Shown here one piece after another: positions 1 through 56,570 of a stretch of 64,000 nucleotides of DNA. The translations under genes were made by a program, and so were the position numbers. This DNA is from Octopus sinensis (taxonomy: Eukaryota). The stretch is from assembly GCF_006345805.1 (NCBI RefSeq), contig NC_042997.1, forward strand, positions 206,522,001 to 206,586,000. Reading direction: 5' to 3'. The first letter of the stretch is position 1, and every line of letters begins with the position of its first letter. Below the pieces are notes generated by a model, which worked only from the letters and a program-made list of their open reading frames with translations, did no database searches and was not told the origin of the DNA.

Positions 1-71
1 ATGAAGCCTTCCGGCTTCACAGACCCCAGTTAAACCGTCCAACCCATGCTAGCATGGAAAACGGACGCTAA

Positions 72-106
<35 letters not shown>

Positions 107-211
107 ATATATATAACGGGAAGGTTTACGAAAATAAACAAAAGACGAAGGCAGGTGGAATACAAACAAACAATGTATTAGTATGGTGCTCAGGAATAGA
201 AATAAAACAAG

Positions 212-250
212 TCTTTTACGTTTCGAGCCTACGCTCTTCGACAGAAAGAT
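212..250 (-). ncRNA. Minimal hammerhead-ribozyme-like motif in a Penelope-like terminal fragment (variant core)
   Basis: Minus strand reads UCUUU-CUGUCGA-A-GAGC GUAG GCUC-GAAAC-GUA-AAAGA: stem II GAGC/GCUC, stem I UCUUU/AAAGA, palindromic ACGU stem III. A6 of the CUGANGA core is U. Confidence 0.55.
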
Positions 251-666
251 ACACAGAAAAGAAACAAGGAAAGAAAAAAATTGCGTGTAGGGGCTAACGA
301 TCCAACATGGCGTATATATATATATATATATATATATATCTGAGGCCATCATCATCATCATAATCTTTTAACATCTGTTTTCCATGCCAGAAATGGGTTG
401 GATGGTTTGATGTCAGTGCTCTTATGTCTGCTTTGGTAGGAGTTCATCATCACACCCACTAGCACCACCATCACAACCATTATCTCACCAACACCCCCAC
501 TACAACAATTACTAGACTACAGTGCTGTGTTTTATATTTCAATATTTGTTGTCTAAACCCCAAAATTAGTCAAAATATTCCTGCTTTGTTTTTTTTTAAC
601 TTTCAACAGAAAGGGTTCATAATTTTATTTTAATTCTGAAATATTTGATTTCTATTTGAACTTTAG

Positions 667-800
667 AACCAATCCCAGATACATGGTCACCAATGGAAGA
701 CGAGGAATTAATTAAAATCGTTCCAGTCACAAAAGGACCAGAATATGATGACATCCAGGCCACTTTCCGTCGGAATTTGCCTTCCTATCGTATAATCAAA
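667..800 (+). CDS. Gene A PARP domain exon 1 (EPIPDTWSPMEDEELIKIVPVTKGPEYDDIQATFRRNLPSYRIIK)
   Basis: ctttAG acceptor at 665-666, GT at 801; open frame; paralog of 12513-12646; resembles the start of PARP14/15 catalytic domains. Confidence 0.85.
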
Positions 801-1189
801 GTTTGTATTTTTACTTCTGTTTATAAACAATATTTGATGGTTTATTGTTAAAACAAAATGTTAAGAGACATTTTCTTTGTATAAAAGACTTAAATCTCAT
901 AGTATGAACCTATTTTGGGATGGTTTTATGTGTTTTTGGATATTCACAAGAAATCTTTGCTCAACAAAAATACCTCTGCTTTAACTTCTTGCATTGAATT
1001 GTAAATGCAACACCATTTTGCAGCTAAACTATTATGCCTTACCAAAATTTACGGTTGAATCAAAATTGGTATCAAATAAAAAAGAAAAAAACAAGCAGAT
1101 AGGGTTGGGGATTTTCACCACAAACGTTATTTCCTTGTCAAAGAAGAGAATTGATTGTCTTTTCATAAATGTATTTTCCTTTTCTACAG

Positions 1190-1367
1190 ATTGAGAGAAT
1201 TCAAAATAAAACATTGTACCAGGGATACCAATCATTGAAAAGAAAGTTTGAGGCAGAAAATCCAAACATTACAAATGAAGTTGATGGCCTTTGGCATGGT
1301 ACTGCTGAAGGAGCTGTTAAGGGAATAAATAAATCAGGATTCAACCGTAGCTATTGTGGTAGAAATG
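1190..1367 (+). CDS. Gene A PARP domain exon 2 (IERIQN...LWHGTAEGAVKGINKSGFNRSYCGRNG)
   Basis: tttctacAG acceptor, GTAAGT donor at 1368; IERIQN, WHGT (catalytic His) and GFNRSY motifs. Confidence 0.92.
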
Positions 1368-2204
1368 GTAAGTATATTATAATCAACATCATCATCCTCA
1401 TCTACCCACCCTTCCTATTGTCCTGAGCTGGACAGTCACTCTCCACATTGATTGCTGTTTAGAATCCTTTCTCACACAGAGAGGATGTCATGTTGCTCAC
1501 ACATTCCATGTTTGGCATCGTTTCTACTGCCAGGTCCCCTTCCTAACATCTTCTGCTCTAGAGTAAACCAGGTGTATTTTATTATTGTGGAACCAACACT
1601 TTTATTTGGATTGGGAGGAAGGGTCTGTCCCCATCCATTAATGTTCCTCTTGAACCTTTGTAAATGAAAATATTGCAGGAAAGATAAGAGAAGGGGTGGA
1701 ATTTCAGAGGGATAATGTTATAGGAAGAAGGAAAAAGTTTAGTGGAGAGTCTGCAGGACTAGACAGAAATATCAACAAGCGAACACCAGGCCTAGCAATC
1801 ACCATTCTGAGTGTGTCAATTCTAGATATACTGAGATAATCAATCCAGTGTTGTTAACTCTCATTGAAATATTCAATGTCTGCTACGGCCTAGAAATTGG
1901 TTAAGGGACATTTAATAACTGTACAGAAATCTGATAAACCAGCAGAGGTCACTCCATTTAGATATCTCAAACGACCCTCTCTCACTAACTCTTTTATCAT
2001 CTTTTGGAATTAGATTTGGATGTGTTTGGTGAATATGGATATGGGGTGAGAAGAGTGGGGTTCCACAAAATGCCACCCAAACAAGTTCAGTGGTAAATAT
2101 TGGCAAGGGATAGGCTCTCCCAATGATAAAACATCATTTCCTGAAACCTGTTTGATGTCACATGGTGTCGTGTGATGACGGAATGTCTTAGATTCAAAGA
2201 GATA

Positions 2205-3190
2205 AGCTCAATATCTCGTGTGACCACTATTATTGTTGATTACTACCCGGCATCTTCTGCACATTGAATGCACCAAACGATTGATGAAAGCCATGGGGAT
2301 AGCAGCTGACACTGTTAAAACTTGCAGTGAGTTGTCTCTGAGTTTTCGGTCTTGGACAGGTGTCATTTAGCCTTCTTTGGGGTTTCATCCCACAGGTGCT
2401 CTATAGGGTTTGAGTCTGGACTGAAGCCAGTGTCTGGATGTTGATGTTGTTGGAGGAAGCCTGTTGTCAACCTGGCAGTATGGTCACGGGAATTGTTATG
2501 TCAGAACATGTAATTCCAACAACAGGCAAAGTATGGCACAATGTGAGGCCTCCAAATTTGGTCAATATAGCAAGCAGCAGTTACTCCATTTCCTCAGCCT
2601 TCACCAATGTTTCGGAAGACCACCAGTTCAGGTTTATGGTTGAGTGCAATCTTGCCCCTTGCCATGATGCTCTGTCTTCCCTATGAGTATCACTCCACAA
2701 TACAGCCTTTGGCATGACATTCCCCCCTTCTCTTCCAAATGCCAGCTCTGCTGTCTTCCAGAGAAATGCAATATCGACTTTTGTCAGACAAGACTACACT
2801 CCTCCACTACTCATGTTGCCAGCTCTGACGTTTTTGCAGCTCACTGCAGATGTACCCATCAATAATGATCTGTGAGGATGTGGATCCTAGCTGGACTTTG
2901 GTGAGTCAAATTGAAAGGTCTCAGCACAAATGGGTCTGTGGTGAGTTCCTTTGCTCTGCCTAGCTGATTCCATTGCCCTACAGAATCAGTGCTGTCGGTG
3001 CTGATGACAGTCATGACATGTTGTAACCCTTGGTCGGCCACTATGTGGATGATTATCAGCCATTCAGTTGTCCAAATACTGCAGTTCAAGTCATTAGCAA
3101 TGACCTATGGACGTTGACCAGTATGGAGACATCTGATGGCTTGCTCCCTCTGATTTCATGTCAGTCTTGTTACACTTGCTGCATTTGGGA
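2205..3190 (-). mobile_element. Decayed Tc1 transposase in a gene A intron (duplicate of the above with extra deletions)
   Basis: Reverse complement of about 10075-11090, lacking segments of about 32 and 9 bp; a further ~47-bp segment is missing at its edge. Confidence 0.85.
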
Positions 3191-3491
3191 GTCGACGTTC
3201 TGGCCCTGCATCATGCTTTGCATAAAGATGCGTTCGTGAGCATTACCATATTCACGAGAAGTGAGCGAATTTGAACCCTAAATGCAATCCTTGTGTTTTC
3301 AAAAGAGAGTGGTGTTGTGGGTCAGTGACATCTTCCTGATGTCAAATTACCTAGAATTGTGATAAAATCTATATAATCTCAATGTCGTGAAACAAATAAT
3401 CTTTTACAGTGTGATGTGTTTATATTATAACTGTATCAAGGAATTTCCGAAACACTCCAAATATATATATATTTTTTCTTTCTGTTCTTAG

Positions 3492-3754
3492 GTGGATATG
3501 GTAAAGGTGTCTATTTTGCCAAAAACATCCAATATTCTGCAGATGATAACTATTCTCCTCCTGACCATCACAAAATAAAGAGAATATACCAATGCAGTGT
3601 TCTTGTGGGAAGAATGATACAAGGACACCCAGGATTAAAAGTTTTACAGGATCCTTACAATTCTGCTGTTAATAATATTCAAAGACCCTTTATTTATGTT
3701 ACTTTCGATGACTCTCAAGCATATCCTAATTATTTGATTACATTCTCTAATTGA
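3492..3754 (+). CDS. Gene A PARP domain terminal exon (GYGKGVYFAK...PFIYVTFDDSQAYPNYLITFSN*)
   Basis: ttcttAG acceptor at 3490-3491; YGKGVYFA and QAYPxYLITF motifs; TGA at 3752-3754; phase fits exon 2. Confidence 0.92.
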
Positions 3755-4124
3755 AATTAAGACTTTTGTAATGCTTTGAGCTGAGATTGGTAATTCTAAA
3801 GCCATTCACATTTCTATCCTTAAAATTATTAAAACTAACACTCTTCAAATTTATAACGCTAACAATATTTGAATTTGTAACACAAAACTATTCTGATTCT
3901 TCTTTTTTTTATTCTTTTACTTGTTTCAGTCATTTGACTGTGGCCATACTGGTGCACTGCCTTTAGTCGGGCAAATCAAACCCAGGACTTATTCTTTGTA
4001 AGCCTGGTACTTATTCTATTGTTCTCTTTTGCCAAACCGTTAGGTTGCGGGGATGTAAACAAACTAGCATCAGTTGTTAAGCAATGTTGGGGGGATAAAC
4101 ACAGACACACAATCTTATACACAC

Positions 4125-4168
<44 letters not shown>

Positions 4169-5619
4169 TAAATAAGGGTAGAAATTGATATTAATCAATT
4201 AAAACTAGTAGCCTAGCATATTTCAAAAATCCAAAGATTAAAGATATTGTTTACATACAAAATTTAAAGGACTGACCATTAAAAGTGGACAGTCTATATG
4301 CTAGATATAAACGTCAAAATCGCTATTTTCCACAAAGAATGTGTTCTCAAGAAAAAACTCAGCAAAAAACCAAAGTGTAAAAATAAGCAAGACAAATGAA
4401 AATATACGAAATAAAAAACGATTACCTATGTACTAATTAGTTTCACTTGTTAATATCCACGTATATGTACATGTGAACATCTGCAAGATCATCAGCATAG
4501 TCATAGAGAAGGTGAAGACTATTCAGTTGCTTTGAACTGCTAGAAGATTTTGAGAAGAATGAACAATTGAAAGGAGAGAAAGATTTTCTATTTATAGAAA
4601 TTGGGGTTAAATAGATGTCAAAGTTCCATATAAAGAAATTGAGGTAGAGAGAAAAGGGTTGTCACACTACAGATGCCTTTTACTACTATTTGGTAAACAG
4701 ATTTAGCATTAGGAAAACTAGGTTAGCATCAAATGGTTATAATGATTATAATGACCACTCATAGAGAAAGCAGAGATTTTTTTAAAAACTTATATACATC
4801 ACCTTTATAATTAGCTGATAGGTTTTGAGTATTTTGATACATTAGATTAAAGGAGAAATTATAGATCTAAAATTTATTCAATTTAGAGAAAAATCTATCA
4901 CTTATTATGAGTAGGCATAATACTTATTAATTGGGGACAAAATTCTTATTAATTATTAGTGACATATGAAGAAGGAATTTTTATATTCCAAAATATTATA
5001 TCAGACTATGAATATTATATCAGACTATGAATTTTCATATCAATTATAACATTTATTATAGTCCACTCTGCATTGTTGTGCCATTCAAGACATGTTATAT
5101 TTCACAAATATATATATATCTAGTGAGTCAGATGTCCTGTTATGGCCATCTCTTATGTGTTTAAATGTACACTGTATTAATATATATATGAGAATGCATG
5201 TTTAGTGATTACACATGATTGAATATACAAGGAAAGAAATAAGATGAAAAAACACAGATTTGTTTCATGAAACTGTGGTAAAAGTATTATAGAATAATAT
5301 ACAAAATAAGATTTTTTCCCTCTGATAAACCAACAGGTTTCACTGTAGTTTTTCAAATTTTGAGTATTAAATGCATTATGAAAGGAGAAATTTTGTTTGT
5401 TAAGGGGTAGATAATTGGTATTTTGAGTAAAGGGGAGGTAATTCTGTAATTTATATTCAGTTCTGGCTTATATTTTCAAGAAAAATGAGGCCTCTTTATA
5501 TTTAGTTGCACTTGTATAATTTTCAATATGGACTTATATTTAGTTCTTGCTTATATTTCTTCACTAAATGAGCCCCCTTAATTTAGTTACATTTGTGTTA
5601 AGGTCCAAAAAACACATTG

Positions 5620-6480
5620 ATATAATTGGAAGATTAAGAATTGTGGTTGCAGTTGTTCTGCACATCTATGAATGGGTTCACTGAGATGTATCTGGCGATA
5701 TTGTGGGGAACAAATCTATTGCCTGTGGACTGTACATCCACGTCTAAGAGCCATCCCTGTGGAAACTGTATAGTTTTTATGGCAGCCCCAGCTTCTGGTG
5801 ACATAAAGAAGGTTTTGGGAGGTGCGAGAGAAATTGGATTTAATTTTGAATTTTTGCCCTTGTTTAAACTGGAATTCTGATCCTTCCAAAAGATTGAAAC
5901 ATGTTCTGCATTTTTTTTACTCCTGTGTCTGTTATTCTTGAGAATAATTTAGCATTTGTGACGATCTTCTTTAATGTCTTTGATTGTCTATTGCTTTTAA
6001 TGATCTTATGTATATGCAGAATTTCCTTCAGTTTGGGGCCCTTATGGAGTATTGGGAGATTTTAAATGCTTCATTGTTTCTGGGGTTGTGTATGGATATA
6101 TAGGTTAGTATTTTTAGAGTAGGTGTGCGACTTTCCTTAATGTTTTTATGTCAATCAATTTTACATGTTTAATCCCATCACCTATGAGCAGAATTGGGTA
6201 GTGTACATTTTTAAGCTCTTGCAGTCTTAGTTCTTTGGTATTTTTTCCATCACTATGGTGCAAATCCTTCTTGCAGGGTTGAAGGGAATATTTGTTTTAA
6301 TATGTCTTGGGTGGCACAAGCTAAATAATAGGTATTGTTTAATGTCTGTATTTTTGTAAAATATGTCCCTTTCTATTTTTTGTGTATCTTTTTAAAACCA
6401 GTATGTCTAGGAATGGGAGTTCCTCTTGGTTGTTTTGCAGTGGGTTTGGAGGTCGGATACATTAAATACACATAAAAAAA
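5620..6480 (-). mobile_element. Penelope-like element remnant (RT C-terminus and GIY-YIG)
   Basis: Minus-strand NQEELPFLDILV near 6400-6430 and degenerate GIY-YIG tail (YTVSTGMALRRGCTVHRQ...PQYRQIHLSE) near 5690-5780. Confidence 0.55.
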
Positions 6481-6739
6481 CCTGTGGAAAAATATTATTT
6501 CACACCAAGGTACAAATGGGTCTTATACAAAATATTTACTGCAAATTTTCCTGAAAACTTCAATTGATAAAAAAATTTCTCTTGCTTAGTAGATATTTCT
6601 TTTAGTAATTTATACATTTAGTGTGCTAGAAATAGCAGCGATCACATAGTTATTATTGTAAGGCGTTCTATTGTAAGCATTCCATACAGCCATACCAACA
6701 AAACCATTTCTTGATGTTTTTTCTTTTGTAAATTATACA

Positions 6740-7035
6740 AAGTCCCACTGCGTGGCATCTTGGGCAAGTGTCTTCTGCTATAGCCCTGGGCCGACCAATG
6801 CCTTGTGAGTGGATTTGGTAGATGGAAACTGAAAGAAGCCTGTCGTATATATGTATATATATGTATATGTGTGTGTGTTTGTCCCCCTAGCATTGCTTGA
6901 CAACCGATGCTGGTGTGTTTACGTCCCCATCACTTAGCGGTTTGGCAAAAAGAGACCGATAGAATAAGTACTAAAAGGTGGTGCTCCAGCATGGCCGCAG
7001 TCAAATGACTGAAACAAGTAAAAGAGTAAAAGAGA
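6740..7035 (+). mobile_element. tRNA-derived SINE
   Basis: Similar to the 8881-9310 SINE, with internal TA/TG microsatellite and gaaacaagtaaaagag tail. Confidence 0.75.
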
Positions 7036-7774
7036 AAAGAGAGTAGGTATATGAAAAAAAATTCATTTTATCAAAAACACACATCAAAGTTATATAGCTA
7101 TTTTGTGTAATAGCATTCATTCATTCACTAAATATTTTTTTTACACTATATATATAGAATAAAGTGGATTTTGCAACAACTTGAAATGAATAAATTGGAA
7201 ATTATCATTAATGAAAATAGAGGCAAGAGAATGTGAGAAACTGTTGCAAATGAAAACTGAAAATGTTGCGTGCAACGAATTGATATTGTTTTTAAAATCT
7301 ACTCTGCAGTGAATGAAATTTAAATTTGTGAAGAACTCATAGTTCAAATACTGAATAAACTTCAGAAATCAAAATTACAGGAAATTTCTTGGAACATGAA
7401 CTTATAAAAAAATTCAAGATGGTCAAGCCTTTAATAATAGCTTTCTTTCAGTGACTACTACATACCTAATTAATAAGCAGCTTTCCTCAATACACACACA
7501 TCATCATCATCATCATTATTTAACGACTGTTTTCCATACTGGCATGGGTTGGATGGTTCAGATGGGGTCTGGGAAGCCAGGAGACTGCACCAAGCTCCAA
7601 TCTGATCTGGCAGTGTTTCTACAGCTGGATGCCCTTCCTAATGCCAACCAATACATTAAGTCTTTCATAGGGAAGACTTAATGTATTGTAAGCTCTATTT
7701 AGCATGGCAATCATTTCAGCTTACATATGCATTACTCCGCAGTGGGTGGGGATGTGTGTGTGTGTTGTTTGTGT

Positions 7775-7820
<46 letters not shown>

Positions 7821-8330
7821 TGCACTTTGCAACATGGGAGCTGTACTGGCTTTTCAAAATGATGCTTTGAGAATCAACCTACATTTTCCATGATATTACT
7901 TGAGAATTCCAAGAAAGATGGTGAAAGTAATGGCAACAGTGTTGTGCATCCCAATAATACCTCAGTATTATACCACCAGGAGGTTGGCCATGGTCTGGTG
8001 ATTTCACTCCAAAATGCTAAGTATGAATATTCCACAGGTTTTTCCACCAATTTTCTCTGATAGCAGGCATTTAATATTTACCAGTTGGGCTCTGCCTGAT
8101 CATATGGATGGGGTTTTGGTAAGCGTAAAGGAATCTTTTTCTTCTAAGAATCACATTTCCAAAATCAGCAGACAGTCTCAAAATTGGTTTATACTTTTTA
8201 TTTTTAAATATAATACAAAATAACAGAACTTTGACTGGATTTGAACTTGCAGCCTTCATTTTATTGTAAGCAATAATTACATTTAATGTAACAAAAAAGG
8301 AAAATGTCAAAATATATTCAATTATTTTAG

Positions 8331-8880
8331 CATCAGAAATCTGAATAGTTTTCCTGTTACAAATCTGAATAGTTTTCCTGTTACAAATCTGAATAGTTTT
8401 ATTGTTACAAATTCAAATATTGTTATTGTTACAAATTTGAATAGTTTTAGTGTTACAAATTTGAATAGTGGTAGTAATACAAGTTTCAATAGTTTTAATG
8501 TCACAAATCTGAATAATTTTCCTGTTACAAATCTGAATAATTTTCCTGTTACAAATCTGAATGCTTTTAATGTTACAAATTTGAATAGTGTTAGTGATAC
8601 AAATTTCAATAATTTTTGTGTTACAAATTCAAATATTGTTAATGTTACAAATCTGGATAGTTATATTGTTACAAATTTGAACAGTGTTAGTGTTACAAAT
8701 GTGAACAGTGTTAGCGTTAAAAATTCAAATAGGTTTAATTATTACATATTTGAAGTTTTAGTGTTACTCTTTTGAAAAGTGGTAGTGATACATTTTTTAA
8801 TAGTTTTAATGTTACAAATCTTAACTGACACAAATGTGAATAATTTTTATATGAATGCTTTTAATGTTACAAATTTGAAT
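8331..8880. repeat. 24-bp minisatellite (consensus GTTACAAATCTGAATAGTTTTCCT)
   Basis: About 17 recognisable units to about 8730, degenerate to 8880; related units resume at 9316-9420 after the SINE. Confidence 0.92.
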
Positions 8881-9314
8881 AGGTGCTGGAGTGGCTGTGT
8901 GGTAAGTTGCTAGCTTACCAGCCACGTTATTCCAGGTTCAGTCCCACTGGGTGGCACCTTGGGCAAACGTCTTCTACTATAGCCTTGGTCCAACCAAAGC
9001 CTTGTGCATGGATTTGGTAGATGGAAACTGAAAGAAGCCCAACATTATATAGATGGATATGTATGTATGTATGTGTGTGTGTGTGTGTGTTGTGTTTGTG
9101 TGTCTGTGTTTATCCCCCCAACATTGTTTAACAACTGATGCTAGTTTGTTTACATCCCCGCAACCTAACGGTTTGGCAAAAGAGAACAATAGAATAAGTA
9201 CCAGGCTTACAAAGAATAAGTCCTGGGTTTGATTTGCCCGACTAAAGGCAGTGCACCAGTATGGCCACAGTCAAATGACTGAAACAAGTAAAAGAAGAAA
9301 AAAAAGAAGAATCA
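8881..9314 (+). mobile_element. Full-length tRNA-derived SINE inserted in the minisatellite
   Basis: tRNA-like head (ggagtggctgtgtggtaag...ggttcagtccc), internal microsatellite, A-rich tail; possible GAATAG target duplication at 8877-8882 and 9315-9320. Confidence 0.8.
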
Positions 9315-9451
9315 GAATAGTTTTGTGTTACAATTCAAATATTGTTAGCGTTATAATTTGAAGAGTGTTAGTTTTAATAATTTTAAGGATAGAAATGTGA
9401 ATGGCTTTAGAATTACCAATCTCAGCTCAAAGCATTACAAAAGTCTTAATT

Positions 9452-9714
9452 TCAATTAGAGAATGTAATCAAATAATTAGGATATGCTTGAGAGTCATCG
9501 AAAGTAACATAAATAAAGGGTCTTTGAATATCATCAACAGCAGAATTGTAAGGATCCTGTAAAACTTTTAATCCTGGGTGTCCTTGTATCATTCTTCCTA
9601 CAAGAACACTGCATTGGTATATTCTCTTTATTTTGTGATGGTCAGGAGGAGAATAGTTATCATCTGCAGAATATTGGATGTTTTTGGCAAAATAGACACC
9701 TTTACCATATCCAC
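9452..9714 (-). CDS. Gene B PARP domain terminal exon
   Basis: Reverse complement of 3492-3754 with 3 nt differences (one silent; NN versus DD); same acceptor and stop. Confidence 0.92.
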
Positions 9715-12700
9715 CTAAGAACAGAAAGAAAAAAAATATATATATTTGGAGTGTTTCGGAAATTCCTTGATACAGTTATAATATAAACACATCACACTGT
9801 AAAAGATTATTTGTTTCACGACATTGAGATTATATAGATTTTATCACAATTCTAGGTAATTTGACATCAGGAAGATGTCACTGACCCACAACACCACTCT
9901 CTTTTGAAAACACAAGGATTGCATTTAGGGTTCAAACTCGCTCACTTCTCGTGAATATGGTAATGCTCACGAACGCATCTTTATGCAAAGCATGATGCAG
10001 GGCCAGAACGTCGACTCTTTTGGGTGTAAGAGGCACCCAAGTTCTCCAGCCTATCATTCATTTCCCAAATGCAGCAAGTGTAACAAGACTGACATGAAAT
10101 CAGAGGGAGCAAGCCATCGGATGTCTCCATACTGTTCAACGTCCATAGGTCATTGCTAATGACTTGAACTGCAGTATTTGGACAATTGAATGGCCGAGGG
10201 AATGAGATAGTGCCACAAACAACATGGATAATCATCCACACAGTGGCCGACCAAGGGTTATAACAACACGTCATGATTGTCATCTGCAGCGACAGCACTT
10301 GCAGGACTGATTCTTTAGGACAATGGAATCAGCTAGGCAGAGCATAGGAACTCACCACAGACCCATTTGTGCTGAGACCTTTCAATTTGACTCACCAAAG
10401 TCCAGCTAGGAGCCACATCCTCACAGATCATTATTGATGGGTACATCTGCAGTGAGCTGAAAAACGTCAGAGCGGGCAACATGAGTAGTGGAGGAGTGTA
10501 GTCTTGTCTGACAGAAGTCGATATTGCATTTCTCTGGAAGACAGCAGAGCTGGCATTTGGAGGAGAAGGGGGGAATGTCGTGCCAATGGCTGTATGGTGG
10601 AGTGATACTCATAGGGAAGACAGAGCATCATGGCAAGGGGCAAGATTGCACTCAACCATAAACCTGAACTGGTGGTCTTCCGAAACATTGGTGAAGGCTG
10701 AGGAAATGGAGTAACTGCTGCTTGCTATATTGACCAAATTTGGAGGCCTCACATTGTGCCATACTTTGCCTGTTGTTGGAATTACATGTTCTGACATAAC
10801 AATGCCCGTGACCATACTGCAGGTTGACAACAGGCTTCCTCCAAAACATCAACATCCAGACACTGGCTTCAGTCCAGACTCAAACCCTATAGAGCACCTG
10901 TGGGATGAAACCCCAAAGAAGGCTAAATGACACCCGTCCAAGACTGAAAACTCAGAGACAGCTCACTGCAGGTTTTAACAGAGTGTCAGCTGCTATCCCC
11001 ATGGCTTTCATCAATCGTTTGGTGCATTCAATATGCAGAAGATGCCGGGTAGTAATCAACACTAATAGTGGTCACACGAGATATTGAGCTTATCTCTTTG
11101 AATCTAAGACATTCCATCATCACATGACACCATGTGACATCAAACAGGTTTCAGGAAATGATGTTTTATCATTGGGAGAGCCTGTCCCTTGCCAATATTT
11201 ACCATTGAACTTGTTTGGGTAGCATTTTGTGGAACCCCACTCTTCTACTCACCCCATATCCATATTCACCATACACATCAAAATCTAATTCCAAAAGATG
11301 ATAAAAGAGTTAGTGAGAGAGGGTCGTTTGAGATATCTAAATGGAGTGACCTCTGTGATGGTACCTCTGCTGGTTTATCAGATTTCTGTACAGTTATTAA
11401 ATGTCCCTTAACCAATTTCTAGGCCGTAGCAGACATTGAATATTTCAATGAGAGTTAACAACACTGTATTGATTATGTCAGTATATCTATAATTGACCCA
11501 CTCAGAATAGTGATTGTTAGGCCTGGTGTTCACTTGTTGATATTTCTGTCCAGTCCTGCCGACCCACCACTACACCCAGTCCTTCTTCCCCAAAACATTA
11601 CCCCTCTGGAATTCCACCCCTTCTCTTATCTTTCCTGCAATATTTTCATTTACAAAGGTTCAAAGGGAACATTAATGGATGGGGACAGACCCTTCCTCCC
11701 AATCCAAATAAAAGTGTTGGTTCCACAATAATAAGATACACCTGGTTTACTCTAGAGCAGAAGATGTTAGGAAGGGGACCTGGCAGTAGAAACGATGCCA
11801 AACATGGAATGTATAAGCATCATGGCATCCTCTCTGTGTAAGAAAGGATTCTAAACAGCAATCAATGTGGAGAGTGACTGTCCAGATCAGGACAATAGGA
11901 AGGGTGGGTAGAGGACACCACTGCTGCCACTTCGAGAATATTTACTTACCATTTTTACTACAATATCTACAGTTGAATCCATATCTATTTATTCTCTCAA
12001 CACATTCTGCAGTAGTACCATGCCAAAGGCCATCAACTCCAATTTTAACCTTAGGATTTTCTGCCTCAAATTGTTCTTTCAATGCTTTGTATCTCTGGCA
12101 TAATGTTTTATTTTGAATTCTCTCAATCTGTAGAAAAGGAAAATACATTTATGAAAAGACAATCAATTCACTTCTTTGACAAGAAATAACATTTGTGGTG
12201 AAAATCCCCAACCCTATCTGCTTTTTTTTTTCTTTTTTATTTGATACCAATTTTGATTCAACTGTAAATTTTGGTAAGGCACAATAGTTTAGCTGCAAAA
12301 TGGTGTTGCATTTACAATTCAATGCAAGAAGTTAAAGCAGAGGTATTTTTGTTGAGCAAAGATTTCTTGTGAATATCCAAAAACACATAAAACCATCCCA
12401 AATAAGTTCATACAATGAGATTTAAGTCTTTCAACACAAACAAAATGTCTCTTAACATTTTGTTTTAACAATAAACCATCAAATATTGTTTATAAACAGA
12501 AGTAAAACAAACTTTGATTATACGATAGGAAGGCAAATTCCGACGGAAAGTGGCCTGGATGTCATCATATTCTGATCCACTTGTGACTGGAACGATTTTA
12601 ATTAATTCCTCGTCTTCCATTGGTGACCATGTATCTGGGATTGGTTCTAAAGTTCAAATAGAAATCAAATATTTCAGAACAAATATAAGAATATTGTTGA

Positions 12701-15293
12701 AAGTTTATAAAAAAACAGGTATATTTTGACAAAATGTTGGGTTTAGACAAGAAACACTGAATTACTAATGATTTCTATAGTTTAATAGTAGTAATGATAG
12801 TGTGCAAAATTTCACTCCCATGCAGACATGAAAATTAAGTTCAGGTATTTAATGAAATTATGAGAGATCCTGCGAGAACACCCGATTGGTTAGCAAGAGG
12901 TATTACTTACCTTCTCCTGAAGAATAATGGAACCAGCTTTCCCCAAGACTATCCACCCATGACATGTCTATCTGCCACGTATGAAATTTTAGCATCCATC
13001 CTCATGGAGAAAAACATACAAATTTATGGAACAGAATGATATTTTCCCCACTGAACAAAAAGGGTGCCGACAAGGCTCATATGGATGCAAAGACCAACTC
13101 TTAATGAATAGCATGGCCCTTGAGGAACTGTCATAGCAAATGCAGAAATCTCAGTTCTGCATGGATTGATTATAAAAAAGGCCTTTGACAGCGTGCTGCA
13201 TTCATGGATCTTGAAATCGCTGGATATCTTCCAAATTCCTCACATTTCCTGAAGCACAACATGTCAATGTGGAATACAAATCTCCAGTTATACCACTCTG
13301 ATGGAGTTCTGACCACAAAAGATATTAATATCAACTGTAGCATTTTCCAAGGTGACTCATTTTCATTCTTAATTTTCTGCATAGCCCTAATACTCATTAC
13401 AAATGAATTTAACAGAACAGGGTATGAATATTAAATTGGCGACAAGAAAACAAGTCATCTATTTTATGTGGATGACTTAAAACTCTGTGGCAAAGATGAT
13501 AATGAGCTTGAAGGACTGCTACATACTGTGAAAGCATTTAGTAAGGACATCGGGATGGAATTTGGTTTTGATAAGTGTGCCAAGGTCACTTTCCAGAAAG
13601 GAAAACTGAAGACCTCACATTCAGTGGAGTTGGATGTTGCCACAGTCAAAATAAGGAACACTGACAGGAAAATCAATAAGCAAGAGGATGCACCACCCAA
13701 AGGCCGATGCAGATCGTGTTTACCTACCCAGAGCTCAAGGAAGTCAAGGCTTGATTCGATTTGAAATCTCCTACAAAACCACCACAATTGGTCAGGTAAA
13801 ATATCTTGAAACATCTGATAAATGGCTGCAAAAGCTCATTGAGAAACACGAAAGACATAAAAAGCCTCATTCTGTTGTGTTCAAGTGGAACTGCATGAGG
13901 GAAGTGCAACAACTCTAGTTGCAAAGAAGGTGAAATGAAGAGCAAAGCAAAATGCGTTTAAACAATTGGTTGATAGGTGGGAACAAAAACCTCTGCATGG
14001 CAAATATGTGGCCCATAGCAAACAAGCTGATGTAGACCAGAAGCACACCCATCAGTAGCTAGGGAGCTCAGGGCTAAAGGCAGAGAGTGAAGGCTTTATC
14101 TTGGCTACTCAAGATCAGAACTTATTGACGCAGAACTATCAAGCCAATGTGATGAAAAATTGTTTAGACTAAAAGTGCCTATACTGTAAGGATGGGATTG
14201 AAACAGTGGACCACCTAATCTCTGGGTGTAAGGATTTAGCACCAGTAGAGTATAAATCAAGAAATGACAGTGTCGACCAGTATCTACTTTGGATAATGTA
14301 TCAGTATCATAAAATCAAAATTGCTGACAAATGGTACAGGCACCACCCTGAGGCTGTTAGAGAGGGAGAAAATGTAACGATTCTTTGGGACTTCCCAGTA
14401 TGTACAGATTTGACCATCAAGGCAAATAAACCAGAAATTGTTTTGAAAGACCAAAACAATAAAGTCTGTTTATTGATTGATGTGAGCGTACTTTGTGACT
14501 ATGATGTCTCAGCAAAAGAATTTGATAAGCTCAGAAAATATAAAGATCTGCTGATTGAAATCAAAAAGATGTGGCATCTCAAGATGGCTACAATACCAGT
14601 GATTGTAGGAGCACTTGGAATGATCAAAACAGGAACTGAAAATTATTTAAGAATGATCCTGGCTTACCATCCATGCAGGAAGTGCTAAAGATTGTCTTAA
14701 CTGGTAACTGGTCACACGTATTGAGAAGAGCATCGTTGCTGTGAATTTTCTTTACTTTTTTCCCCTTATTTCTTGTTTACTTTTAAATTCTGTTAGATTG
14801 TTTAACTGCCACATCACACACACTGAGAAGAGAATTGCCACTGTGAATTTTATTTCTTTTCTTTTATTTTCCTTGTTTACTTTTTATTTCTTTTTTCCCC
14901 TTTATTTTCTTGTTGTTTTAAATTTTTGTTAAGATTGTTTTAACTGCCACATCACACACATGAGAAGAGAATTGCCACTGTGAATTTTATTTCCTTTTCC
15001 CTTTATTTTCTTTGTTTATTTTAAATTCTGTTAAGATTGTTTTAACTGCCACATCACACACACTGAGAAGAGAATTGCCACTGTGAATTTTCTTTACTTT
15101 TTTCCCCTTTATTTTCTTTGTTTACATTTTTATCTTTCTCTATGTCTTTCTTCCACTTTTTCTCTATCACATGACTTTGTAAATGAACGATCTGGTGTGT
15201 TTCTTTCAATGGCTTACCAATATATAGTGAGTTTCTCTGCCCTAGGTGTCAGGAAGACACCCAGCAAGAAATGGAAACAGAATTGAAGGATAG

Positions 15294-15346
<53 letters not shown>

Positions 15347-18400: not shown

Positions 18401-21276
18401 TGATCATGAGCAGAAGTAGTGGGGGAGCATCATAGCCATGTGTTGAGGGGGATTCTTTGGGGTTTGAATAATTCACCTTTGGAAACATGGGTGTTTCATT
18501 CATCATCTTTAAACACCCCTTATTCAGGAATCTTTTGAGCGGGATGGGCTCTTCGATATGACAAGAAAGTCTGAGCCCCACCTGCAAGGTCATACACTTT
18601 TTATCTTGTTATGAGATCATAATGTCACACACATGGTTGTGATGTATGGGCCTGGTGTACCCTTATCAGATGGGTAGACATAATGGGTATACTGGACTTT
18701 GTATATTTGTACCCCACTGTCACTTTGATGGCATGCATTGCTCTCTCACTCAATAATAATAAAAATAATACTCTTTGTTATTAAAGGCACAAGGCCTGAA
18801 GTTTTGGAGGAAGGGATTCTGGATTACACTGACCCCAGTGTGTAACTGGTACTTATTTCATTGTCCCTGAAAGGTGGAATTTGAACTCAGAATGTTAAGA
18901 CAGACAAAATGCCACTAAGCATTTTGCCCAACATGCTAATGATTCTGCCAGCTCACCTCCTGAACAACAACAACCACGAAAAGAGACACTAGTTTTTTCC
19001 TAAATAAAATTGAAGATAAATAAAAAGAAAGTATTTACCTGATGATGCAGCTGAACTACCTGTTGTGTTTCCTTGGAAATATTCTTCAAATTTCTGTTAG
19101 AAGTAAACAATTAATTTATCATCACTCAATCAAAAACATAATTAATTTCCTAATTAACTTCTGTTAATTTCAATGCAATGCTTTTATTCATTGCTTCTAT
19201 CATGAATATTGTTTTAAATTTACATTTCTATTTATCAATATAAATAAAACTGAAAATGTGCGTGTGTATCTGTGTGCATCACTAAAACTCGAGAACTACC
19301 CAACCAATTCAACAAATATCATTCAAATTTTACACATGCCTTACTTAGGGTCTATGCAGTGTTATGGGCCAAAAATGTTTCAACTTCTTGCCTAATGCAA
19401 GCCCAGAGAAATCTCTTATCTCTTACACTGTTTTGGTATTGTGTCAAAAGTGAAACAATAATATCTCTATTGTAATGTGATATAATAGTTTCACGATTAT
19501 ATGGCTTCAATTTCAATTACTTTCACTATCTGTATATATATATTAATTTCAGTTCTATTAGTCTCACTATGTATTTACATAACGTTTGTATATGTATATA
19601 TACTGCTGAGGACATGCGTAAGCTCACAAGGAATGAAGCCACTATGCCCGATGGATGTGTAATGTCAGTGTGCATGCTCGACAGAGTGTTGGTACCTTGA
19701 AAGATAAGTTGGACCTAAGAAGCATCAGATGTAGTGTGCAAGAGAGACGACTGTGCTGGTATGGTCATGTGGCGAGAATAGATGTGGATAGCTGTGTGAA
19801 AAAGTGCCACACCCTAGCGGTTGAGGGAACCTGTGGAAGAGGTAGACCTATGAAGACCTGGGATGAAGTGGTGAAGCATGACCTTTAAACATTGGGCCTC
19901 ACCAAGGCAATGACTAGTGACTGGACCTTTGGAAATATGCTGTGCTTGAGAAGACTCAGCAAGCTTAAGTGAGACCATAACCTCGTGGCCTATGCCAGGG
20001 GTGTAACCAGCTCACTTATGCGTACCTTTTCTTCATTGGACACTAAACTCTGCTTGCGAAGACCAGTTGAGGCAAGTGAAATCAGAATCAAATTCGATGA
20101 CTGACATCCTATGCTAGTGGAGCGCTAAGAGCACCATACGAGCGTGATTGTTGCCAGAGCAACAAGTTGGACTCCGTGCCAGTGGCACGTAAAATCACTA
20201 TTCGAGCATGATCATTACCTGCGTCGCCTTGCTGACACTTGTGTAGGTGGCACATGAAAAAATATTGTATCTGTTGTAGCAATGCATTGTCTGGGTATCT
20301 AGACAAGATTTCTATGCTAATTCGGTTCCGCACACCACCATGTTGTCCTTTGGCATGCTGGTAGAGTATTGAGGCCTGCCTCTAATCCTTGTATCCTCTC
20401 CATTGTTTATTTATATGCTTGGCCAAACTTCTCACTATTTCACCTATGTATGTAGTCTTCTGGTTTTTATAATCACCATTCATGCACTTCATTCGGTAAA
20501 CCACATTTCTCGTTTTGCAGTTGACACCAAGGCTATATTTGCATAGTCCTGGCATGGACCATGTTTGGATGGTGCTCCTCACATGCCATTGGCACAGGAG
20601 TCTGTCAGAAGGCAACGGTCCCAGCTACGATATTGGTTTTACTTGACTCAACAAGTCTTCTCAAGCATATCATATCGCTTGGCACATCAGGAGTATTCTT
20701 AACAGGGCTGGACATGTGTGGTTGCGATCTCACTTTAGTCGCAGGGTCTTCTCGATCACAGCATATCTCCAAAGGTCACGGTCTCCTGTCATTGCCTCTG
20801 TGAGGCAATGAAATTTAAATAATCAGAAAATGAAGAACACTTTTGATCAACAAAGAAACAAATTGGATCACATCTATAGATTACTTTTCAATACAAAACA
20901 TGACAAAACAATTCTTACGGCTGTTTCTGCTTCCAATGCCAGTCAGTGCTAATGAAAGAATTACAAAACTAATATTCATCATCTTCATAGGACATTTGAT
21001 CTGGAGCTTCATCAGAGTGAATACAAATGCGTAAAATAAAATAAATGAAGGGAAGAGAAAATAGAAAAGAACATACCTTGAGAAGAGGCCATGAGGCTCA
21101 ATATATTAAAATCATACCATCTTCCAGAGGAGAACTTTGAAGTTGATAGGCAAAAGAGTGATCTAGCAGTGGTGTAGGGAAATATCTATGGGCGATTTCT
21201 ATATAAAGTGGGGAGCCAGGATGTTTGGAATGTAGTGAAATGAAGTTAGCACTAAAATAATATATGCATGCACATG

Positions 21277-55638: not shown

Positions 55639-55731
55639 CTGAAAATAAACAAATATCAGTGTGTGTGTGTATAGACACATACACACACACACACACATAC
55701 CAACATCATTATTACCCCCCATCATGATATA

Positions 55732-55862
55732 TTTAGAAATTGAATCAGTCATTAGGTTTATTTCAATGCCATCATTTTCTCCAGATGCCACATTAGTTCT
55801 GGGTGTCATAGGGGCTGCTTTCAGTTGTGGACCAAGAAGGGATGGGTTTAATGATGTGGTTT
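55732..55862 (-). other. Tandem partial duplicate of the macro N-terminal exon (ETTSLNPSLLGPQLKAAPMTPRTNVASGENDGIEINLMTDSISK); original donor missing
   Basis: Clear similarity to 55502-55638 with an intact acceptor; homology stops before GCATCT/GTGAGT. Confidence 0.7.
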
Positions 55863-55934
55863 CTGAAAATAAACAATTAAACATTCTTCTCTCTCTCTTA
55901 AAAGAACTACTTTATTCCATATAAATAGTAATGA

Positions 55935-56570
55935 CTAGCAGTATCGCCCGGCGTTGATCAGGTTTATAAGGTAAATAACTATATAAGCATTTTTAGAGAG
56001 TTATAGCCAAAAAATAGCAAAAAATGCATTAAAAATGGAAAAAATATGATGGTAAATTTTTTTTTAAATCGCTGACTCATCGTAGACATTTTTAGAGAGT
56101 TACTTCCCTTATATAATAGCGAAAAAATGCATTAAAATGGAAAAAAAACGATGGTAATTTTTTTTTTAAATCGTAGACTCATGTAGACGCTTTCTTAGCC
56201 ATTTCTGTTTTGGTGTCTTAAAGCCATGAAGTCGTTGTTCTAAAAGAACGCTGGTCTCCTTGACAACGCATTACGACGTTGATTTCCTTACACTCCCTTC
56301 CCCACAGGTGCAGGTGTGAGCATGGACGCCAACTCCGCCGCCATCGACACACGAAAAATTATGCATTAAAATGGAATAAAAAATGATGTTAAATTATTTT
56401 TAAAATCGTAGACTCATCGTAGACGCGCGCTAATACTCAGACGGGCTCGATATGAATCACAACTATAAGCTACCCGAATTTGGTTAAACTGCACCGCAAA
56501 ATGTGGGAGTAGTTAGGATCTAAATCGAAGGGGACAGACACTCACACAACTACAGTTTTATATATATAGA
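55935..56570. mobile_element. Non-autonomous Helitron/Helentron-like element with three internal repeats
   Basis: Starts actagcagtatcgcccggcgttg; repeated aaaatgcattaaaa...aaatcgtagactcat units; ends in tatatatataga. Classification is from recalled similarity only. Confidence 0.5.

What the first reader, a model, noticed from the sequence alone, without database searches (positions are those of the whole stretch)
1190..12127. One hypervariable exon in otherwise near-identical PARP catalytic paralogs
Seen (manual count): exon 2 (1190-1367 versus 11950-12127) differs at 29 of 178 nt and 23 of 59 residues, about 25 non-synonymous against 4 synonymous changes. Exon 1 differs at 3 of 134 nt, exon 3 at 3 of 263 nt, and the upstream intron at about 3 in 90 bp. 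WHGT is kept, while the helix after it and the donor (D) loop are rewritten: GTAEGAVKGINKSGFNRSYCGRN versus GTTAECVERINRYGFNCRYCSKN. Gene B gains three Cys. Established: the D-loop shapes the NAD+/substrate site in PARPs. Inference: the two genes are diversifying in target specificity. The first ~30 nt of the following intron also differ, so a short conversion tract from a third paralog may contribute.
Basis: partly seen in the sequence, partly recalled or inferred. Interest (0 to 1): 0.82.

Follow-up and report, generated by a model that had tools for sequence, protein, structure and literature searches.

The report
Swapped exon cassette in octopus PARP paralogs
Two nearly identical octopus PARP14/15-like enzyme copies differ sharply in one exon because each carries a different, old version of that exon, most likely exchanged between gene copies by gene conversion, and not because the exon mutated rapidly after the duplication.

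Summary
The two copies are arms of a 3.6 kb inverted duplication in an Octopus genome (532-4163 and 12768-9046). The divergent block is exon 2 plus the first ~35 nt of intron 2 (21% against 2.7% for the rest of the arms, P~1e-24).

The block was not rewritten after the duplication. Copy B's version also occurs in the O. vulgaris ortholog, in a third O. sinensis locus (97% identical) and in an O. bimaculoides gene (92%). Copy A's version is the family's common type (97% to another O. sinensis paralog). Both types, including their intron starts, predate the split of these species (bootstrap 300/300). Breakpoints are significant, and synonymous divergence in exon 2 is also raised.

So the pair is a gene-conversion mosaic inside a fast-evolving macro-PARP cluster (family-wide dN/dS about 1). 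B is the 3' end of a macro-PARP gene spanning at least 46 kb. A is a catalytic-domain-only partial copy.

Exon 2 encodes helices alpha2 and alpha3 and the D-loop base, which form the dimer interface in human PARP15. B-type replaces the Arg equivalent to PARP15 R576. The functional consequence is inferred, not tested.

The parts
532..4163 (+). Arm A of the inverted duplication. It holds the three catalytic-domain exons of copy A, both introns and about 410 nt of 3' flank.
   Evidence: blastn and MAFFT of the window against itself. Outside the two divergent tracts the arms are about 97-98% identical.
9046..12768 (-). Arm B of the inverted duplication. It is the 3' end of the full-length macro-PARP gene B.
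   Evidence: It is collinear with O. vulgaris OX597814.1, where it is annotated as the end of a 1096-aa RRM/Macro/PARP gene.
4164..9045 (.). Spacer between the arms. It is the ancestral 3' flank of the gene family, in B's orientation, and includes a 24-nt x 20 tandem repeat at 8337-8819.
   Evidence: Homologous sequence follows the paralogs in L001 and L006 in the same order. Tandem repeat from TRF.
667..800 (+). Copy A catalytic exon 1 (134 nt).
   Evidence: AG/GT splice sites and reading frame. It differs from B at 3/134 nt.
1190..1367 (+). Copy A catalytic exon 2 (178 nt), A-type cassette. It encodes a strand end, helix alpha2, a loop, the His strand (WHGT), helix alpha3 and the D-loop base (GFNRSYCGRN).
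   Evidence: It is closest to O. sinensis P0006 (5/178 differences) and P0003 (7/178).
3492..3754 (+). Copy A catalytic exon 3 (263 nt, stop codon included). It holds the Tyr (YGKGVYFA) and the Ile of the H-Y-I triad.
   Evidence: It differs from B at 3/263 nt.
12513..12646 (-). Copy B catalytic exon 1.
11950..12127 (-). Copy B catalytic exon 2, B-type cassette (…LCQRYKALKEQFEAENPKVKIGVDGLWHGTTAECVERINRYGFNCRYCSKN).
   Evidence: It differs by 5/178 nt from O. sinensis P0008, by 7/178 from the O. vulgaris ortholog and by 14/178 from the O. bimaculoides L009 gene.
9452..9714 (-). Copy B catalytic exon 3 (stop codon included).
1216..1401 (+). Strongly divergent block in arm A, from the first exon-2 difference to the end of the A-type intron start (GTAAGTATATTATAATCAAC(ATC)n…). 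At informative sites the P6-like signal runs on to about 1690.
   Evidence: Max-chi-square breakpoints lie between 1151 and 1216 (0/300 permutations reach the observed value).
11912..12101 (-). The corresponding divergent block in arm B, with the B-type intron start GTAAGTAAATATTCTCGAAGTGGCAGCAGTGGTGTCCTC.
   Evidence: The same intron start is found in B_vul, P8_sin and the O. bimaculoides gene.
1690..1840 (+). Second exchange tract, inside intron 2. Here A_win matches O. sinensis P0008 (0-3% divergence), while A_vul, B_vul and B_win match one another (12-14% from A_win).
23675..25125 (-). Upstream exons of gene B: a linker exon (25125-25018) and a two-exon Macro domain (24737-24501 and 23902-23675). 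Limits are approximate, from tblastn.
   Evidence: Pfam PF01661, E = 3e-21; tblastn with P0016, P0018 and P0019.
54160..55962 (-). Further upstream exons of gene B: linker exons (55962-55735 and 55615-55499) and a second Macro domain (55219-54983 and 54384-54160). They lie in a 1.6 kb intragenic duplicate of 23636-25201.
   Evidence: Pfam PF01661, E = 5e-18; tblastn; 92.4% nucleotide identity between the two units.
19028..19096 (-). Candidate linker exon of gene B, between the last macro domain and the catalytic domain.
   Evidence: A single weak tblastn hit: P0016 residues 928-950, 83% identity, E = 2e-5.

Best explanation
The window comes from an Octopus genome of the vulgaris/sinensis group. 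It holds a 3.6 kb inverted duplication of the last three exons (the ADP-ribosyltransferase domain) of a PARP14/15-like macro-PARP gene. Copy B is the authentic 3' end of a gene spanning at least 46 kb, with macro domains upstream. Copy A is a catalytic-domain-only partial copy lying 4.9 kb downstream in inverted orientation.

The arms are about 98% identical, either because the duplication is recent or because the arms are kept alike by arm-to-arm gene conversion. The exception is a roughly 190-480 bp segment covering exon 2 and the start of intron 2, where the two copies carry two different, old versions of the cassette. A-type is the common form of the family. B-type is the extreme of a sub-lineage that already existed before O. 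bimaculoides split from the vulgaris group. The pair is therefore a mosaic produced by non-allelic (interlocus) gene conversion within a multi-copy, fast-evolving gene cluster.

The most likely direction (inferred, about 60%) is that A began as a copy of B and its exon 2 was overwritten by a short tract from an A-type paralog resembling O. sinensis P0006. Once 16-21% divergent, the block resists further homogenisation, through heteroduplex rejection and/or selection, while conversion continues around it.

Functionally (inferred), both copies keep the H-Y-I mono-ART triad. The cassette encodes helix alpha2, helix alpha3 and the D-loop base. In human PARP15 these form the ART-ART dimer interface and the anchor of the NAD+-site loop. 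Swapping the cassette probably changes regulation, partnering or NAD+-site dynamics (or recognition by a pathogen factor), not the chemistry itself.
For: - Inverted duplication and its divergence profile.
- An independent O. vulgaris assembly has the same structure, with A-type exon 2 in A and B-type in B.
- Exon trees disagree. In exon 2, {B_win, B_vul, P8_sin, Pb_bim} separate from all other copies (bootstrap 300/300). In exon 3, {A_win, B_win, A_vul, B_vul} form a tight group.
- Both forms of the first ~35 nt of intron 2 occur in O. bimaculoides as well as in the vulgaris group.
- The O. bimaculoides B-type exon 2 is 92.1% identical to B and 86.5% to A.
- P0018 (O. sinensis) and P0017/P0161 (O. 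bimaculoides) carry intermediate exon-2 peptides, so B-type arose gradually in a sub-lineage.
- Breakpoint test: A_win is B-like over 654-1151 and P6-like over 1216-1690 (chi-square 54, 0/300 permutations). B_win is P8-like from about 733. The sliding nearest-paralog scan agrees.
- Synonymous divergence is raised in exon 2 (4/34 sites against 1/83, P = 0.025), and non-coding sequence is replaced as well.
- Exchange continued after the window and O. vulgaris lineages split: tract 1690-1840, the 5' end of exon 3, and a micro-tract in codons 26-29 of P8_sin.
- Gene B's macro exons. There are no macro exons in the 17.8 kb upstream of A_vul.
- Triad, fold and mapping of the cassette onto structure. 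PARP15 dimer interface and R576: PMC12572374.
Against: - The donor in the same genome was not seen. The closest A-type and B-type relatives come from other species' assemblies, because no eukaryotic genome search was available.
- The direction of conversion is not resolved. An older A-type copy whose flanks were overwritten by B gives the same present-day pattern.
- A segment at window 313-531, upstream of A's exon 1, is homologous to other paralogs but absent from present-day B. A was therefore not copied from B exactly as B now stands.
- Introns are less diverged than exons across the whole family. Segment trees are noisy, and some of the mosaic could reflect family-wide intron homogenisation instead of a single tract.
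- Expression of A is unknown.
- PARP14 keeps the Arg-Asp pair yet is monomeric, so the dimer-interface reading is only an analogy.
Confidence: 0.85

Rival explanations
1. After a recent duplication, exon 2 alone accumulated about 29 new substitutions under positive selection, diversifying the D-loop and helix and hence the target specificity of the two enzymes.
For: - The pair shows 25 non-synonymous against 4 synonymous changes, dN/dS 1.58.
- Parsimony counts on the B-type lineage give 35 N: 5 S.
- Exon 2 changes about 6 times faster than its flanks even between orthologous copies, with 13 N: 3 S.
- Vertebrate macro-PARPs are known targets of positive selection (PMC4038475).
Against: - B-type and A-type both exist at other loci and in O. 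bimaculoides, so most differences predate this duplication.
- Synonymous sites and about 35 nt of intron are replaced too.
- dN/dS is not significantly above 1 (P = 0.31).
- Breakpoints are sharp and significant.
Confidence: 0.05
2. Reverse history. A is an older, independent A-type (P6-like) catalytic copy. Repeated arm-to-arm conversion from B within the inverted repeat has overwritten almost all of it, and exon 2 is the last island left, protected by selection or by its own divergence.
For: - B-like sequence appears to have been copied into A separately in each lineage: tract 1690-1840 in O. vulgaris and the 5' end of exon 3 in the window lineage.
- A keeps a family-homologous segment at 313-531 that B lacks.
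- A_vul's exon-3 start still has family-consensus (P6-like) states.
Against: - It needs long or many tracts (about 0.65 kb and 2.7 kb) against one short tract in the preferred history.
- The last ~160 nt of intron 2 and the transposon-bearing middle of the intron are unique to A and B, or to A, B and P8, and are not P6-like.
Confidence: 0.25
3. Relaxed constraint. One copy, either the partial copy A or B's divergent exon, is decaying as a pseudogene, and the exon-2 differences are neutral damage.
For: - Family-wide pN/pS is about 1.
- A lacks macro domains, and its O. vulgaris model has a transposon-like N-terminus (weak hAT hit).
- The O. bimaculoides B-type gene model ends by read-through after exon 2.
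Against: - All 11 complete copies keep 190 stop-free, in-frame codons and AG/GT splice sites, while the introns carry many indels (30 gap openings in 2.5 kb between the arms, none in 575 coding nt).
- Catalytic motifs are invariant across the family (H80, G81, GFN, Y111, D177).
- The damage would have to be confined to one exon.
- B-type is nearly identical at three loci.
Confidence: 0.07
4. Assembly artefact. Reads from different paralogs were mis-joined, creating a false chimera in one arm.
For: The region is repeat-rich, inverted, and belongs to a multi-copy family with 92-98% identity between members.
Against: An independent chromosome-level assembly of O. vulgaris shows the same arrangement, the same cassette in each arm and the same breakpoints.
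Confidence: 0.03

Closest known systems
Vertebrate macro-PARPs PARP14/PARP15 (fast-evolving, interferon-linked mono-ARTs; PARP15 arose by partial duplication of PARP14) - Daugherty et al. 2014, PMC4038475
   Same: - The catalytic domain has the same fold and the same triad class: PDB E about 1e-34 to 1e-39, TM 0.81-0.86.
- Gene B has macro domains upstream.
- The family sits in clustered multiple copies, includes partial duplicates, and has a high dN/dS.
   Different: - This is a mollusc lineage, with its own independent expansion. One-to-one orthology to PARP14 or PARP15 was not tested; the names are automatic annotations.
- In primates the strongest selection was reported in the macrodomains. 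Here the catalytic domain itself has pN/pS of about 1.
- Copy A has lost all macro domains.
- That paper does not mention gene conversion at all (0 occurrences).
Interlocus (non-allelic) gene conversion mosaics in clustered multigene families. Textbook examples recalled from general knowledge, not tested here: MHC and KIR genes, globins, arm-to-arm conversion in Y-chromosome palindromes.
   Same: - Neighbouring segments give discordant trees.
- Tracts are short, about 0.15-0.5 kb.
- Variants are shared patchwise among paralogs.
- The arms of an inverted repeat are kept about 98% alike.
   Different: One exon-sized cassette persists as two trans-specific types inside otherwise homogenised copies. 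Introns are more alike than exons across the whole family.
Human PARP15 ART-domain dimer (Ebenwaldner et al. 2025, PMC12572374)
   Same: - Exon 2 encodes the elements that form that dimer interface: helix alpha2, the turn after helix alpha3, and the Arg at the D-loop base.
- A-type keeps the equivalents of R576 and D665.
   Different: - B-type has Cys at the position equivalent to R576, with an Arg one residue later.
- Dimerisation of the octopus domains is untested.
- Human PARP14 has the same Arg-Asp pair yet is monomeric.

Membership tests
PARP catalytic domain, mono-ART H-Y-Φ class (PARP10/14/15-like) | Significant match to the Pfam PARP catalytic domain (PF00644) above its curated cut-off | tested here: met
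   Both copies score E = 1.7e-19 and 70.6 bits against a cut-off of 26.7.
PARP catalytic domain, mono-ART H-Y-Φ class (PARP10/14/15-like) | Catalytic triad: His (HGT strand), Tyr (YGxGxYFA), and a hydrophobic residue in place of the Glu found in poly-ARTs | tested here: met
   The alignment to human PARP14 and PARP15 chains pairs WHGT with FHGT, YGKGVYFA with YGKGTYFA, and the Ile of 'PFIYVTF' with the Leu of 'PSLFVAF'. Both copies are identical at these sites.
PARP catalytic domain, mono-ART H-Y-Φ class (PARP10/14/15-like) | ART fold | tested here: met
   The AF2 model of B has pTM 0.80. Foldseek's top hits are human PARP15 and PARP14 catalytic domains, TM 0.81-0.86, E about 1e-18.
PARP catalytic domain, mono-ART H-Y-Φ class (PARP10/14/15-like) | NAD+-dependent mono-ADP-ribosyl transfer activity | not testable with these tools
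   This needs recombinant protein.
Macro-PARP architecture (macro domain(s) plus PARP domain in one gene) | Macro-domain exons upstream of the catalytic exons on the same strand - copy B | tested here: met
   Two PF01661 macro domains lie on the - strand at 24737-23675 and 55219-54160. The O. vulgaris ortholog is annotated as a 1096-aa RRM/Macro/PARP protein. Transcript continuity was not tested.
Macro-PARP architecture (macro domain(s) plus PARP domain in one gene) | Macro-domain exons upstream of the catalytic exons on the same strand - copy A | tested here: not met
   Only 666 nt lie upstream of A in the window. tblastn found no macro exon in the 17.8 kb upstream of the O. vulgaris ortholog, and the annotated product is 265 aa with a PARP domain only.
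Interlocus gene-conversion mosaic | Adjacent segments with significantly discordant phylogenies or breakpoints | tested here: met
   The exon-2 tree conflicts with the exon-1 and exon-3 trees. The B-type clade has 300/300 bootstrap support. In the max-chi-square test, 0/300 permutations reach the observed value.
Interlocus gene-conversion mosaic | A donor-type sequence exists at another locus | tested here: met
   A's exon 2 is 97.2% identical to O. sinensis P0006, and B's exon 2 is 97.2% identical to O. sinensis P0008. These are in related species' assemblies. The same genome could not be searched.
Interlocus gene-conversion mosaic | The pattern is not an artefact of one assembly | tested here: met
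   The same cassettes and breakpoints are present in O. vulgaris OX597814.1.
   omega = 1.58; binomial P = 0.31.
   pS is 0.117 in exon 2 against 0.012 in exons 1+3 (Fisher P = 0.025). The start of intron 2 has 15/45 mismatches.
   13 B-type-specific sites are fixed in B_win, B_vul and P8_sin. B-type is also present in O. bimaculoides.
Inverted repeat (palindrome) with arm-to-arm conversion | Evidence that one arm copied from the other after the lineages split | tested here: inconclusive
   Two tracts fit this: 1690-1840 (A_vul matches B) and the 5' end of exon 3 (A_win matches B). Conversion from a third paralog into the other ortholog is not excluded.

The most novel reading that the evidence does not exclude
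Exon 2 is a modular, exchangeable cassette that encodes the ART-ART interface and the D-loop anchor. Octopuses keep it as at least two trans-specific types by diversifying or balancing selection, in an expanded and presumably antiviral macro-PARP arsenal. Gene conversion shuffles this cassette between full-length genes and catalytic-only copies such as A. Such copies could act as dimerisation partners, regulators or decoys for full-length PARPs with a matching interface. The B-type would be a variant that has escaped the Arg-dependent dimer control, since the R576 equivalent is replaced by Cys.
Probability: 0.15. Interest if true: 0.7.

Novelty: new member of a known kind. Interest (0 to 1): 0.45.

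Why it matters
This is a clean invertebrate example of something known mainly from vertebrate immune genes: a clustered, fast-evolving macro-PARP family that diversifies by partial duplication and by exchanging short segments between copies.

Two practical lessons follow. First, one hyper-divergent exon inside near-identical paralogs should be tested for mosaic ancestry before it is read as a burst of selection. Synonymous sites, the flanking intron and other paralogs settle the question. Second, the exchanged unit coincides with the part of the ART domain that, in human PARP15, forms the activating dimer interface and anchors the D-loop. The octopus cassettes are therefore natural swap variants for testing how that surface controls mono-ART activity.

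In the paper library searched, only three papers mention both octopus and PARP14, and none describes this octopus PARP14-like family.

Tried and rejected
- A search with the B exon-2 peptide alone in the search for homologous proteins returned nothing ('no candidate shares three words'). It was replaced by the exhaustive HMMER representative search.
- DNA look-ups for P0018 and P0017 failed because those isoforms are not on record. P0161 worked.
- Exact look-ups of the putative 182-aa short products of A and B found nothing in the collection. Species identity and expression therefore stay open.
- Pfam gave no hit for the decayed transposon in intron 2. The first attempt failed because the translation contained stop codons.
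- The idea that the A/B exon-3 difference NN against DD corresponds to PARP15 D665 was considered and rejected. By alignment, D665 maps to the conserved second Asp of 'FDDSQ'.
- A distant, out-of-family donor for B-type exon 2 was looked for. The best non-family hits are at most 63% identical, no better than A-type itself, while graded intermediates exist within the family.
- Formal codon-model tests (PAML or HyPhy with GARD) could not be run. Only Nei-Gojobori and parsimony counts were made, and recombination would bias tree-based tests anyway.

Full report
WHAT IS THERE. The window is eukaryotic, about 37% GC and rich in transposons. Protein searches place it in Octopus. The best hits are 'PARP14/15-like' proteins of O. 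vulgaris, O. sinensis and O. bimaculoides. Window 1-13702 is collinear with O. vulgaris chromosome OX597814.1 at 8.57-8.60 Mb, at 97.3-98.7% identity. The exact species or individual could not be fixed.

The two 'genes' of the finding are the arms of an inverted duplication: arm A at 532-4163 (+) and arm B at 12768-9046 (-), separated by a 4.9 kb spacer. Each arm holds three exons that together encode a complete PARP catalytic domain of 190 codons ending at a stop codon. A's exons are 667-800, 1190-1367 and 3492-3754. B's are 12646-12513, 12127-11950 and 9714-9452. All have AG/GT splice sites. There are no other PARP catalytic exons in the window.

CHECK OF THE OBSERVATION. The divergent block runs from the first exon-2 difference (A 1216) through the first ~35 nt of intron 2, and identity resumes at A 1402 / B 11911. 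It has 44/207 mismatches against 87/3274 in the rest of the arms (Poisson P = 7e-25). A second, smaller divergent tract lies in intron 2 at about 1690-1840.

THE TWO COPIES ARE NOT EQUIVALENT GENES. On B's strand, upstream of its catalytic exons, lie two macro domains at 24737-23675 and 55219-54160 (Pfam PF01661, E = 3e-21 and 5e-18). Linker exons found by tblastn with full-length octopus proteins accompany them. The O. vulgaris ortholog of B is annotated as the end of a 1096-aa RRM/Macro/PARP protein. B is thus the 3' end of a macro-PARP gene spanning at least 46 kb, whose large introns are full of retroelements.

A has no macro exon in the 17.8 kb upstream of its O. vulgaris ortholog. There it is annotated as a 265-aa PARP-only protein, whose N-terminus weakly resembles a hAT transposase dimerisation region (E = 9.5e-4, below the Pfam cut-off). 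The spacer and B's 3' flank are homologous to the 3' flanks of other family members. B therefore sits in the ancestral context, and A is the derived, partial, inverted copy.

WHERE THE EXON-2 DIFFERENCE COMES FROM. I fetched genomic DNA for eight further family members and compared each segment separately: O. sinensis P0008, P0003, P0004 and P0006; O. vulgaris P0005; O. bimaculoides P0007, P0002 and P0161. The O. vulgaris orthologs of A and B were included.

Exon 2 falls into two classes. B-type is carried by B_win, B_vul, O. sinensis P0008 and an O. bimaculoides PARP14 gene (L009). Members differ by 5-7 nt within the vulgaris group and by 14-15 nt from O. bimaculoides. A-type is carried by all other copies in all three species and varies by 5-19 nt. 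The two classes differ by 22-32 nt, and the B-type clade has 300/300 bootstrap support.

The first ~35 nt of intron 2 also come in two forms. One is an (ATC)n-tailed A form. The other is a B form, GTAAGTAnATATTCTCGAAGTGGCAGCAGT.GTGTCCTC. Each form is present in both O. bimaculoides and the vulgaris group. An exhaustive HMMER search with the B-type peptide found no better donor outside the family. It did find intermediates inside it: O. sinensis P0018, and O. bimaculoides P0017/P0161, which even share B_win's 'NPKVKI' motif.

In contrast, in exon 3 the four copies A_win, B_win, A_vul and B_vul form one tight group (0-8 differences). P0008 is their sister at 29-30 differences, and all others differ by 30-52. 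The last ~160 nt of intron 2 are unique to the A and B copies.

A sliding nearest-paralog scan and a max-chi-square test place A's switch from B-like to P0006-like between 1151 and 1216 (chi-square 54, 0/300 permutations). B is P0008-like from about 733 through the block. The exon-2 difference therefore consists mainly of old paralog divergence placed next to young flanks, and the pair is a mosaic.

WHY NOT A POST-DUPLICATION BURST OF SELECTION. Three results argue against it.
- Synonymous divergence in exon 2 (pS 0.117) is about ten times that of exons 1+3 (0.012; Fisher P = 0.025).
- Non-coding sequence is replaced along with the exon.
- dN/dS for the pair is 1.58 and not significantly above 1 (P = 0.31).

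An assembly artefact is unlikely, because the independent O. vulgaris assembly has the same cassettes and breakpoints. Decay is unlikely for three reasons. All 11 complete copies keep stop-free, in-frame exons and splice sites, whereas the introns carry many indels. The catalytic motifs are invariant. B-type is almost identical at three loci.

DIRECTION AND DYNAMICS (INFERRED). About 3 of A's 3.6 kb are B-like and only 0.2-0.5 kb are P0006-like. The simplest history is therefore that A was copied from an ancestor of B, and a short tract from an A-type paralog later overwrote its exon 2. I give this about 60%.

The reverse history, an older A-type copy progressively overwritten by B, is not excluded (about 25%). 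Three observations fit it. A retains a family-homologous segment at 313-531 that present-day B lacks. A_vul's exon-3 start has family-consensus states where A_win equals B. In tract 1690-1840, A_vul equals B while A_win equals P0008.

These last two observations show that exchange continued after the window lineage and O. vulgaris separated, yet exon 2 stayed distinct in both lineages. That persistence can be explained by the block's own 16-21% divergence, which would cause mismatch rejection of heteroduplex. This is established in principle but not tested here. Selection to keep the two types is the other possibility.

THE FAMILY AS A WHOLE EVOLVES FAST. Across paralogs, pN/pS is 0.90 for exon 1, 1.01 for exon 2 and 1.24 for exon 3. 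This is remarkable for an enzyme core whose catalytic residues are invariant. Family-wide, exon 3 is the most divergent exon (11-20%), not exon 2. Intron 1 is more conserved (2-5%) than exons 1 and 3, which remains unexplained.

Exon 2 does show raised turnover even between the orthologous copies of the two assemblies: 9/178 and 7/178 differences, 13 N: 3 S, about 6 times the flanking rate (P = 4e-8). In A, 7 of the 9 differences are states already present in other paralogs, which suggests patchwise exchange. In B, 6 of the 7 differences cluster in codons 25-30, and 4 of the 7 are singletons. B_win keeps the O. bimaculoides B-type motif there, while P0008 carries the A-type motif.

It agrees with what is known for vertebrate macro-PARPs: positive selection, recurrent gain and loss, and the birth of PARP15 by partial duplication of PARP14 (Daugherty et al. 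2014, PMC4038475).

WHAT THE CASSETTE ENCODES. Both copies match Pfam PF00644 (E = 1.7e-19) and the human PARP14 and PARP15 catalytic domains (E = 1e-34 to 1e-39). The model's fold matches them at TM 0.81-0.86. The H-Y-I triad of mono-ARTs is intact in both.

In the model, exon 2 (residues 45-103) comprises a strand end, helix alpha2 (51-67), a loop (68-74), the His strand (75-82), helix alpha3 (84-93) and the N-terminal half of the D-loop. The 23 A/B differences fall as 6 in alpha2, 5 in the loop, 8 in or adjoining alpha3 (residues 83-93) and 4 at the D-loop base.

In human PARP15 the ART domain must dimerise to be active. [quoted passage not shown] By alignment, R576 corresponds to the Arg of A-type 'GFNRSY', which is Cys in B-type 'GFNCRY' with an Arg shifted one position. 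D665 corresponds to the conserved second Asp of 'FDDSQ'.

The cassette therefore coincides with a known regulatory surface. My inference is that swapping it changes partnering or D-loop dynamics, not the catalytic chemistry. 'Target specificity' is neither supported nor excluded. One caveat applies: human PARP14 has the same Arg-Asp pair but is monomeric.

VERDICT. The feature is a gene-conversion mosaic in an expanded, fast-evolving octopus macro-PARP cluster. It is a new member of a known kind of phenomenon, with a moderately interesting structural twist. Expression of either copy, the donor within the same genome, and any biochemical consequence remain untested.

Noticed in passing
window 54121-55699 and 23636-25201 (- strand): A 1.6 kb intragenic duplicate, 92.4% identical including the intron. 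Each unit carries a linker exon and a two-exon Macro domain of gene B. O. sinensis P0016 has four to five such units, so amplification of macro units is a family trait.
   Followed up: partly
window 8337-8819: A 24-nt tandem repeat of about 20 copies (76% matches) in the spacer. Homologous repeats follow the paralogous genes in L001 and L006, so it belongs to the ancestral 3' flank.
   Followed up: partly
window ~2000-3100 (arm A) and ~10200-11250 (arm B), inside intron 2: A decayed element that looks Tc1/mariner-like. The motifs '…HNNARDHTAG…' and '…DSNPIEHLWDE…' are readable, with frameshifts and stops. It is shared by both arms and by O. sinensis P0008. Pfam gave no hit, so the assignment is unconfirmed.
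   Followed up: partly
window 32451-33368 and 50168-51085 (+ strand): Two nearly identical pairs of retroelement ORFs (weak RVT_1 hit), lying inside the large introns of gene B. Other RT-type ORFs lie at 38808-42348 (weak zf-RVT hit) and 12860-13700.
   Followed up: partly
family-wide (window arms and loci L001-L008): Intron 1 is less diverged among paralogs (2-5%; P5_vul against B_vul only 0.8%, although they lie about 200 Mb apart) than exons 1 and 3 (5-19%). Exonic pS is about 0.10. This is unexplained. Either the introns are homogenised while the exons are protected, or the exons are diversified.
   Followed up: partly
L008 21119-21217 (O. bimaculoides, P0002 locus): A second, partial exon 2 (nt 80-178, A-type) lies 14.5 kb after the complete one and before exon 3. 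The annotated protein reads through both. This is either duplication at the level of exon 2 or a fusion of two copies.
   Followed up: no
L009 94035-94212 and downstream (O. bimaculoides PARP14, P0161): The gene model carrying the B-type exon 2 ends by read-through into intron 2, and no exon 3 lies within the 2 kb available. The catalytic domain may be truncated in that species.
   Followed up: no
exon 2/exon 3 junction, window 1359-1367 + 3492-3503 and 11958-11950 + 9714-9703: A, B, P0008 and P0018 share a D-loop one residue shorter (…KNG-xYG…) than all other paralogs (…KNATxFG…). This marks a sub-clade defined by exon 3. The acceptor loop is also about 8 residues shorter than in human PARP14.
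   Followed up: partly
window 313-531: The sequence upstream of A's exon 1, outside the A/B arm homology, is homologous to the intron upstream of catalytic exon 1 in P0008, P0004 and P0005. B lacks it, and a retroelement lies nearby at 12860-13700. The left boundary of the arms may therefore reflect a later deletion or insertion in B, not the edge of the duplication.
   Followed up: partly
window 57310-57960; 15214-15576; 1-110 and 315-360: Long microsatellite or low-complexity runs, (TG/CA)-rich and (ATG/ATC)n, typical of the tails of octopus repeats. The A-type start of intron 2 is itself such an (ATC)n tail.
   Followed up: no
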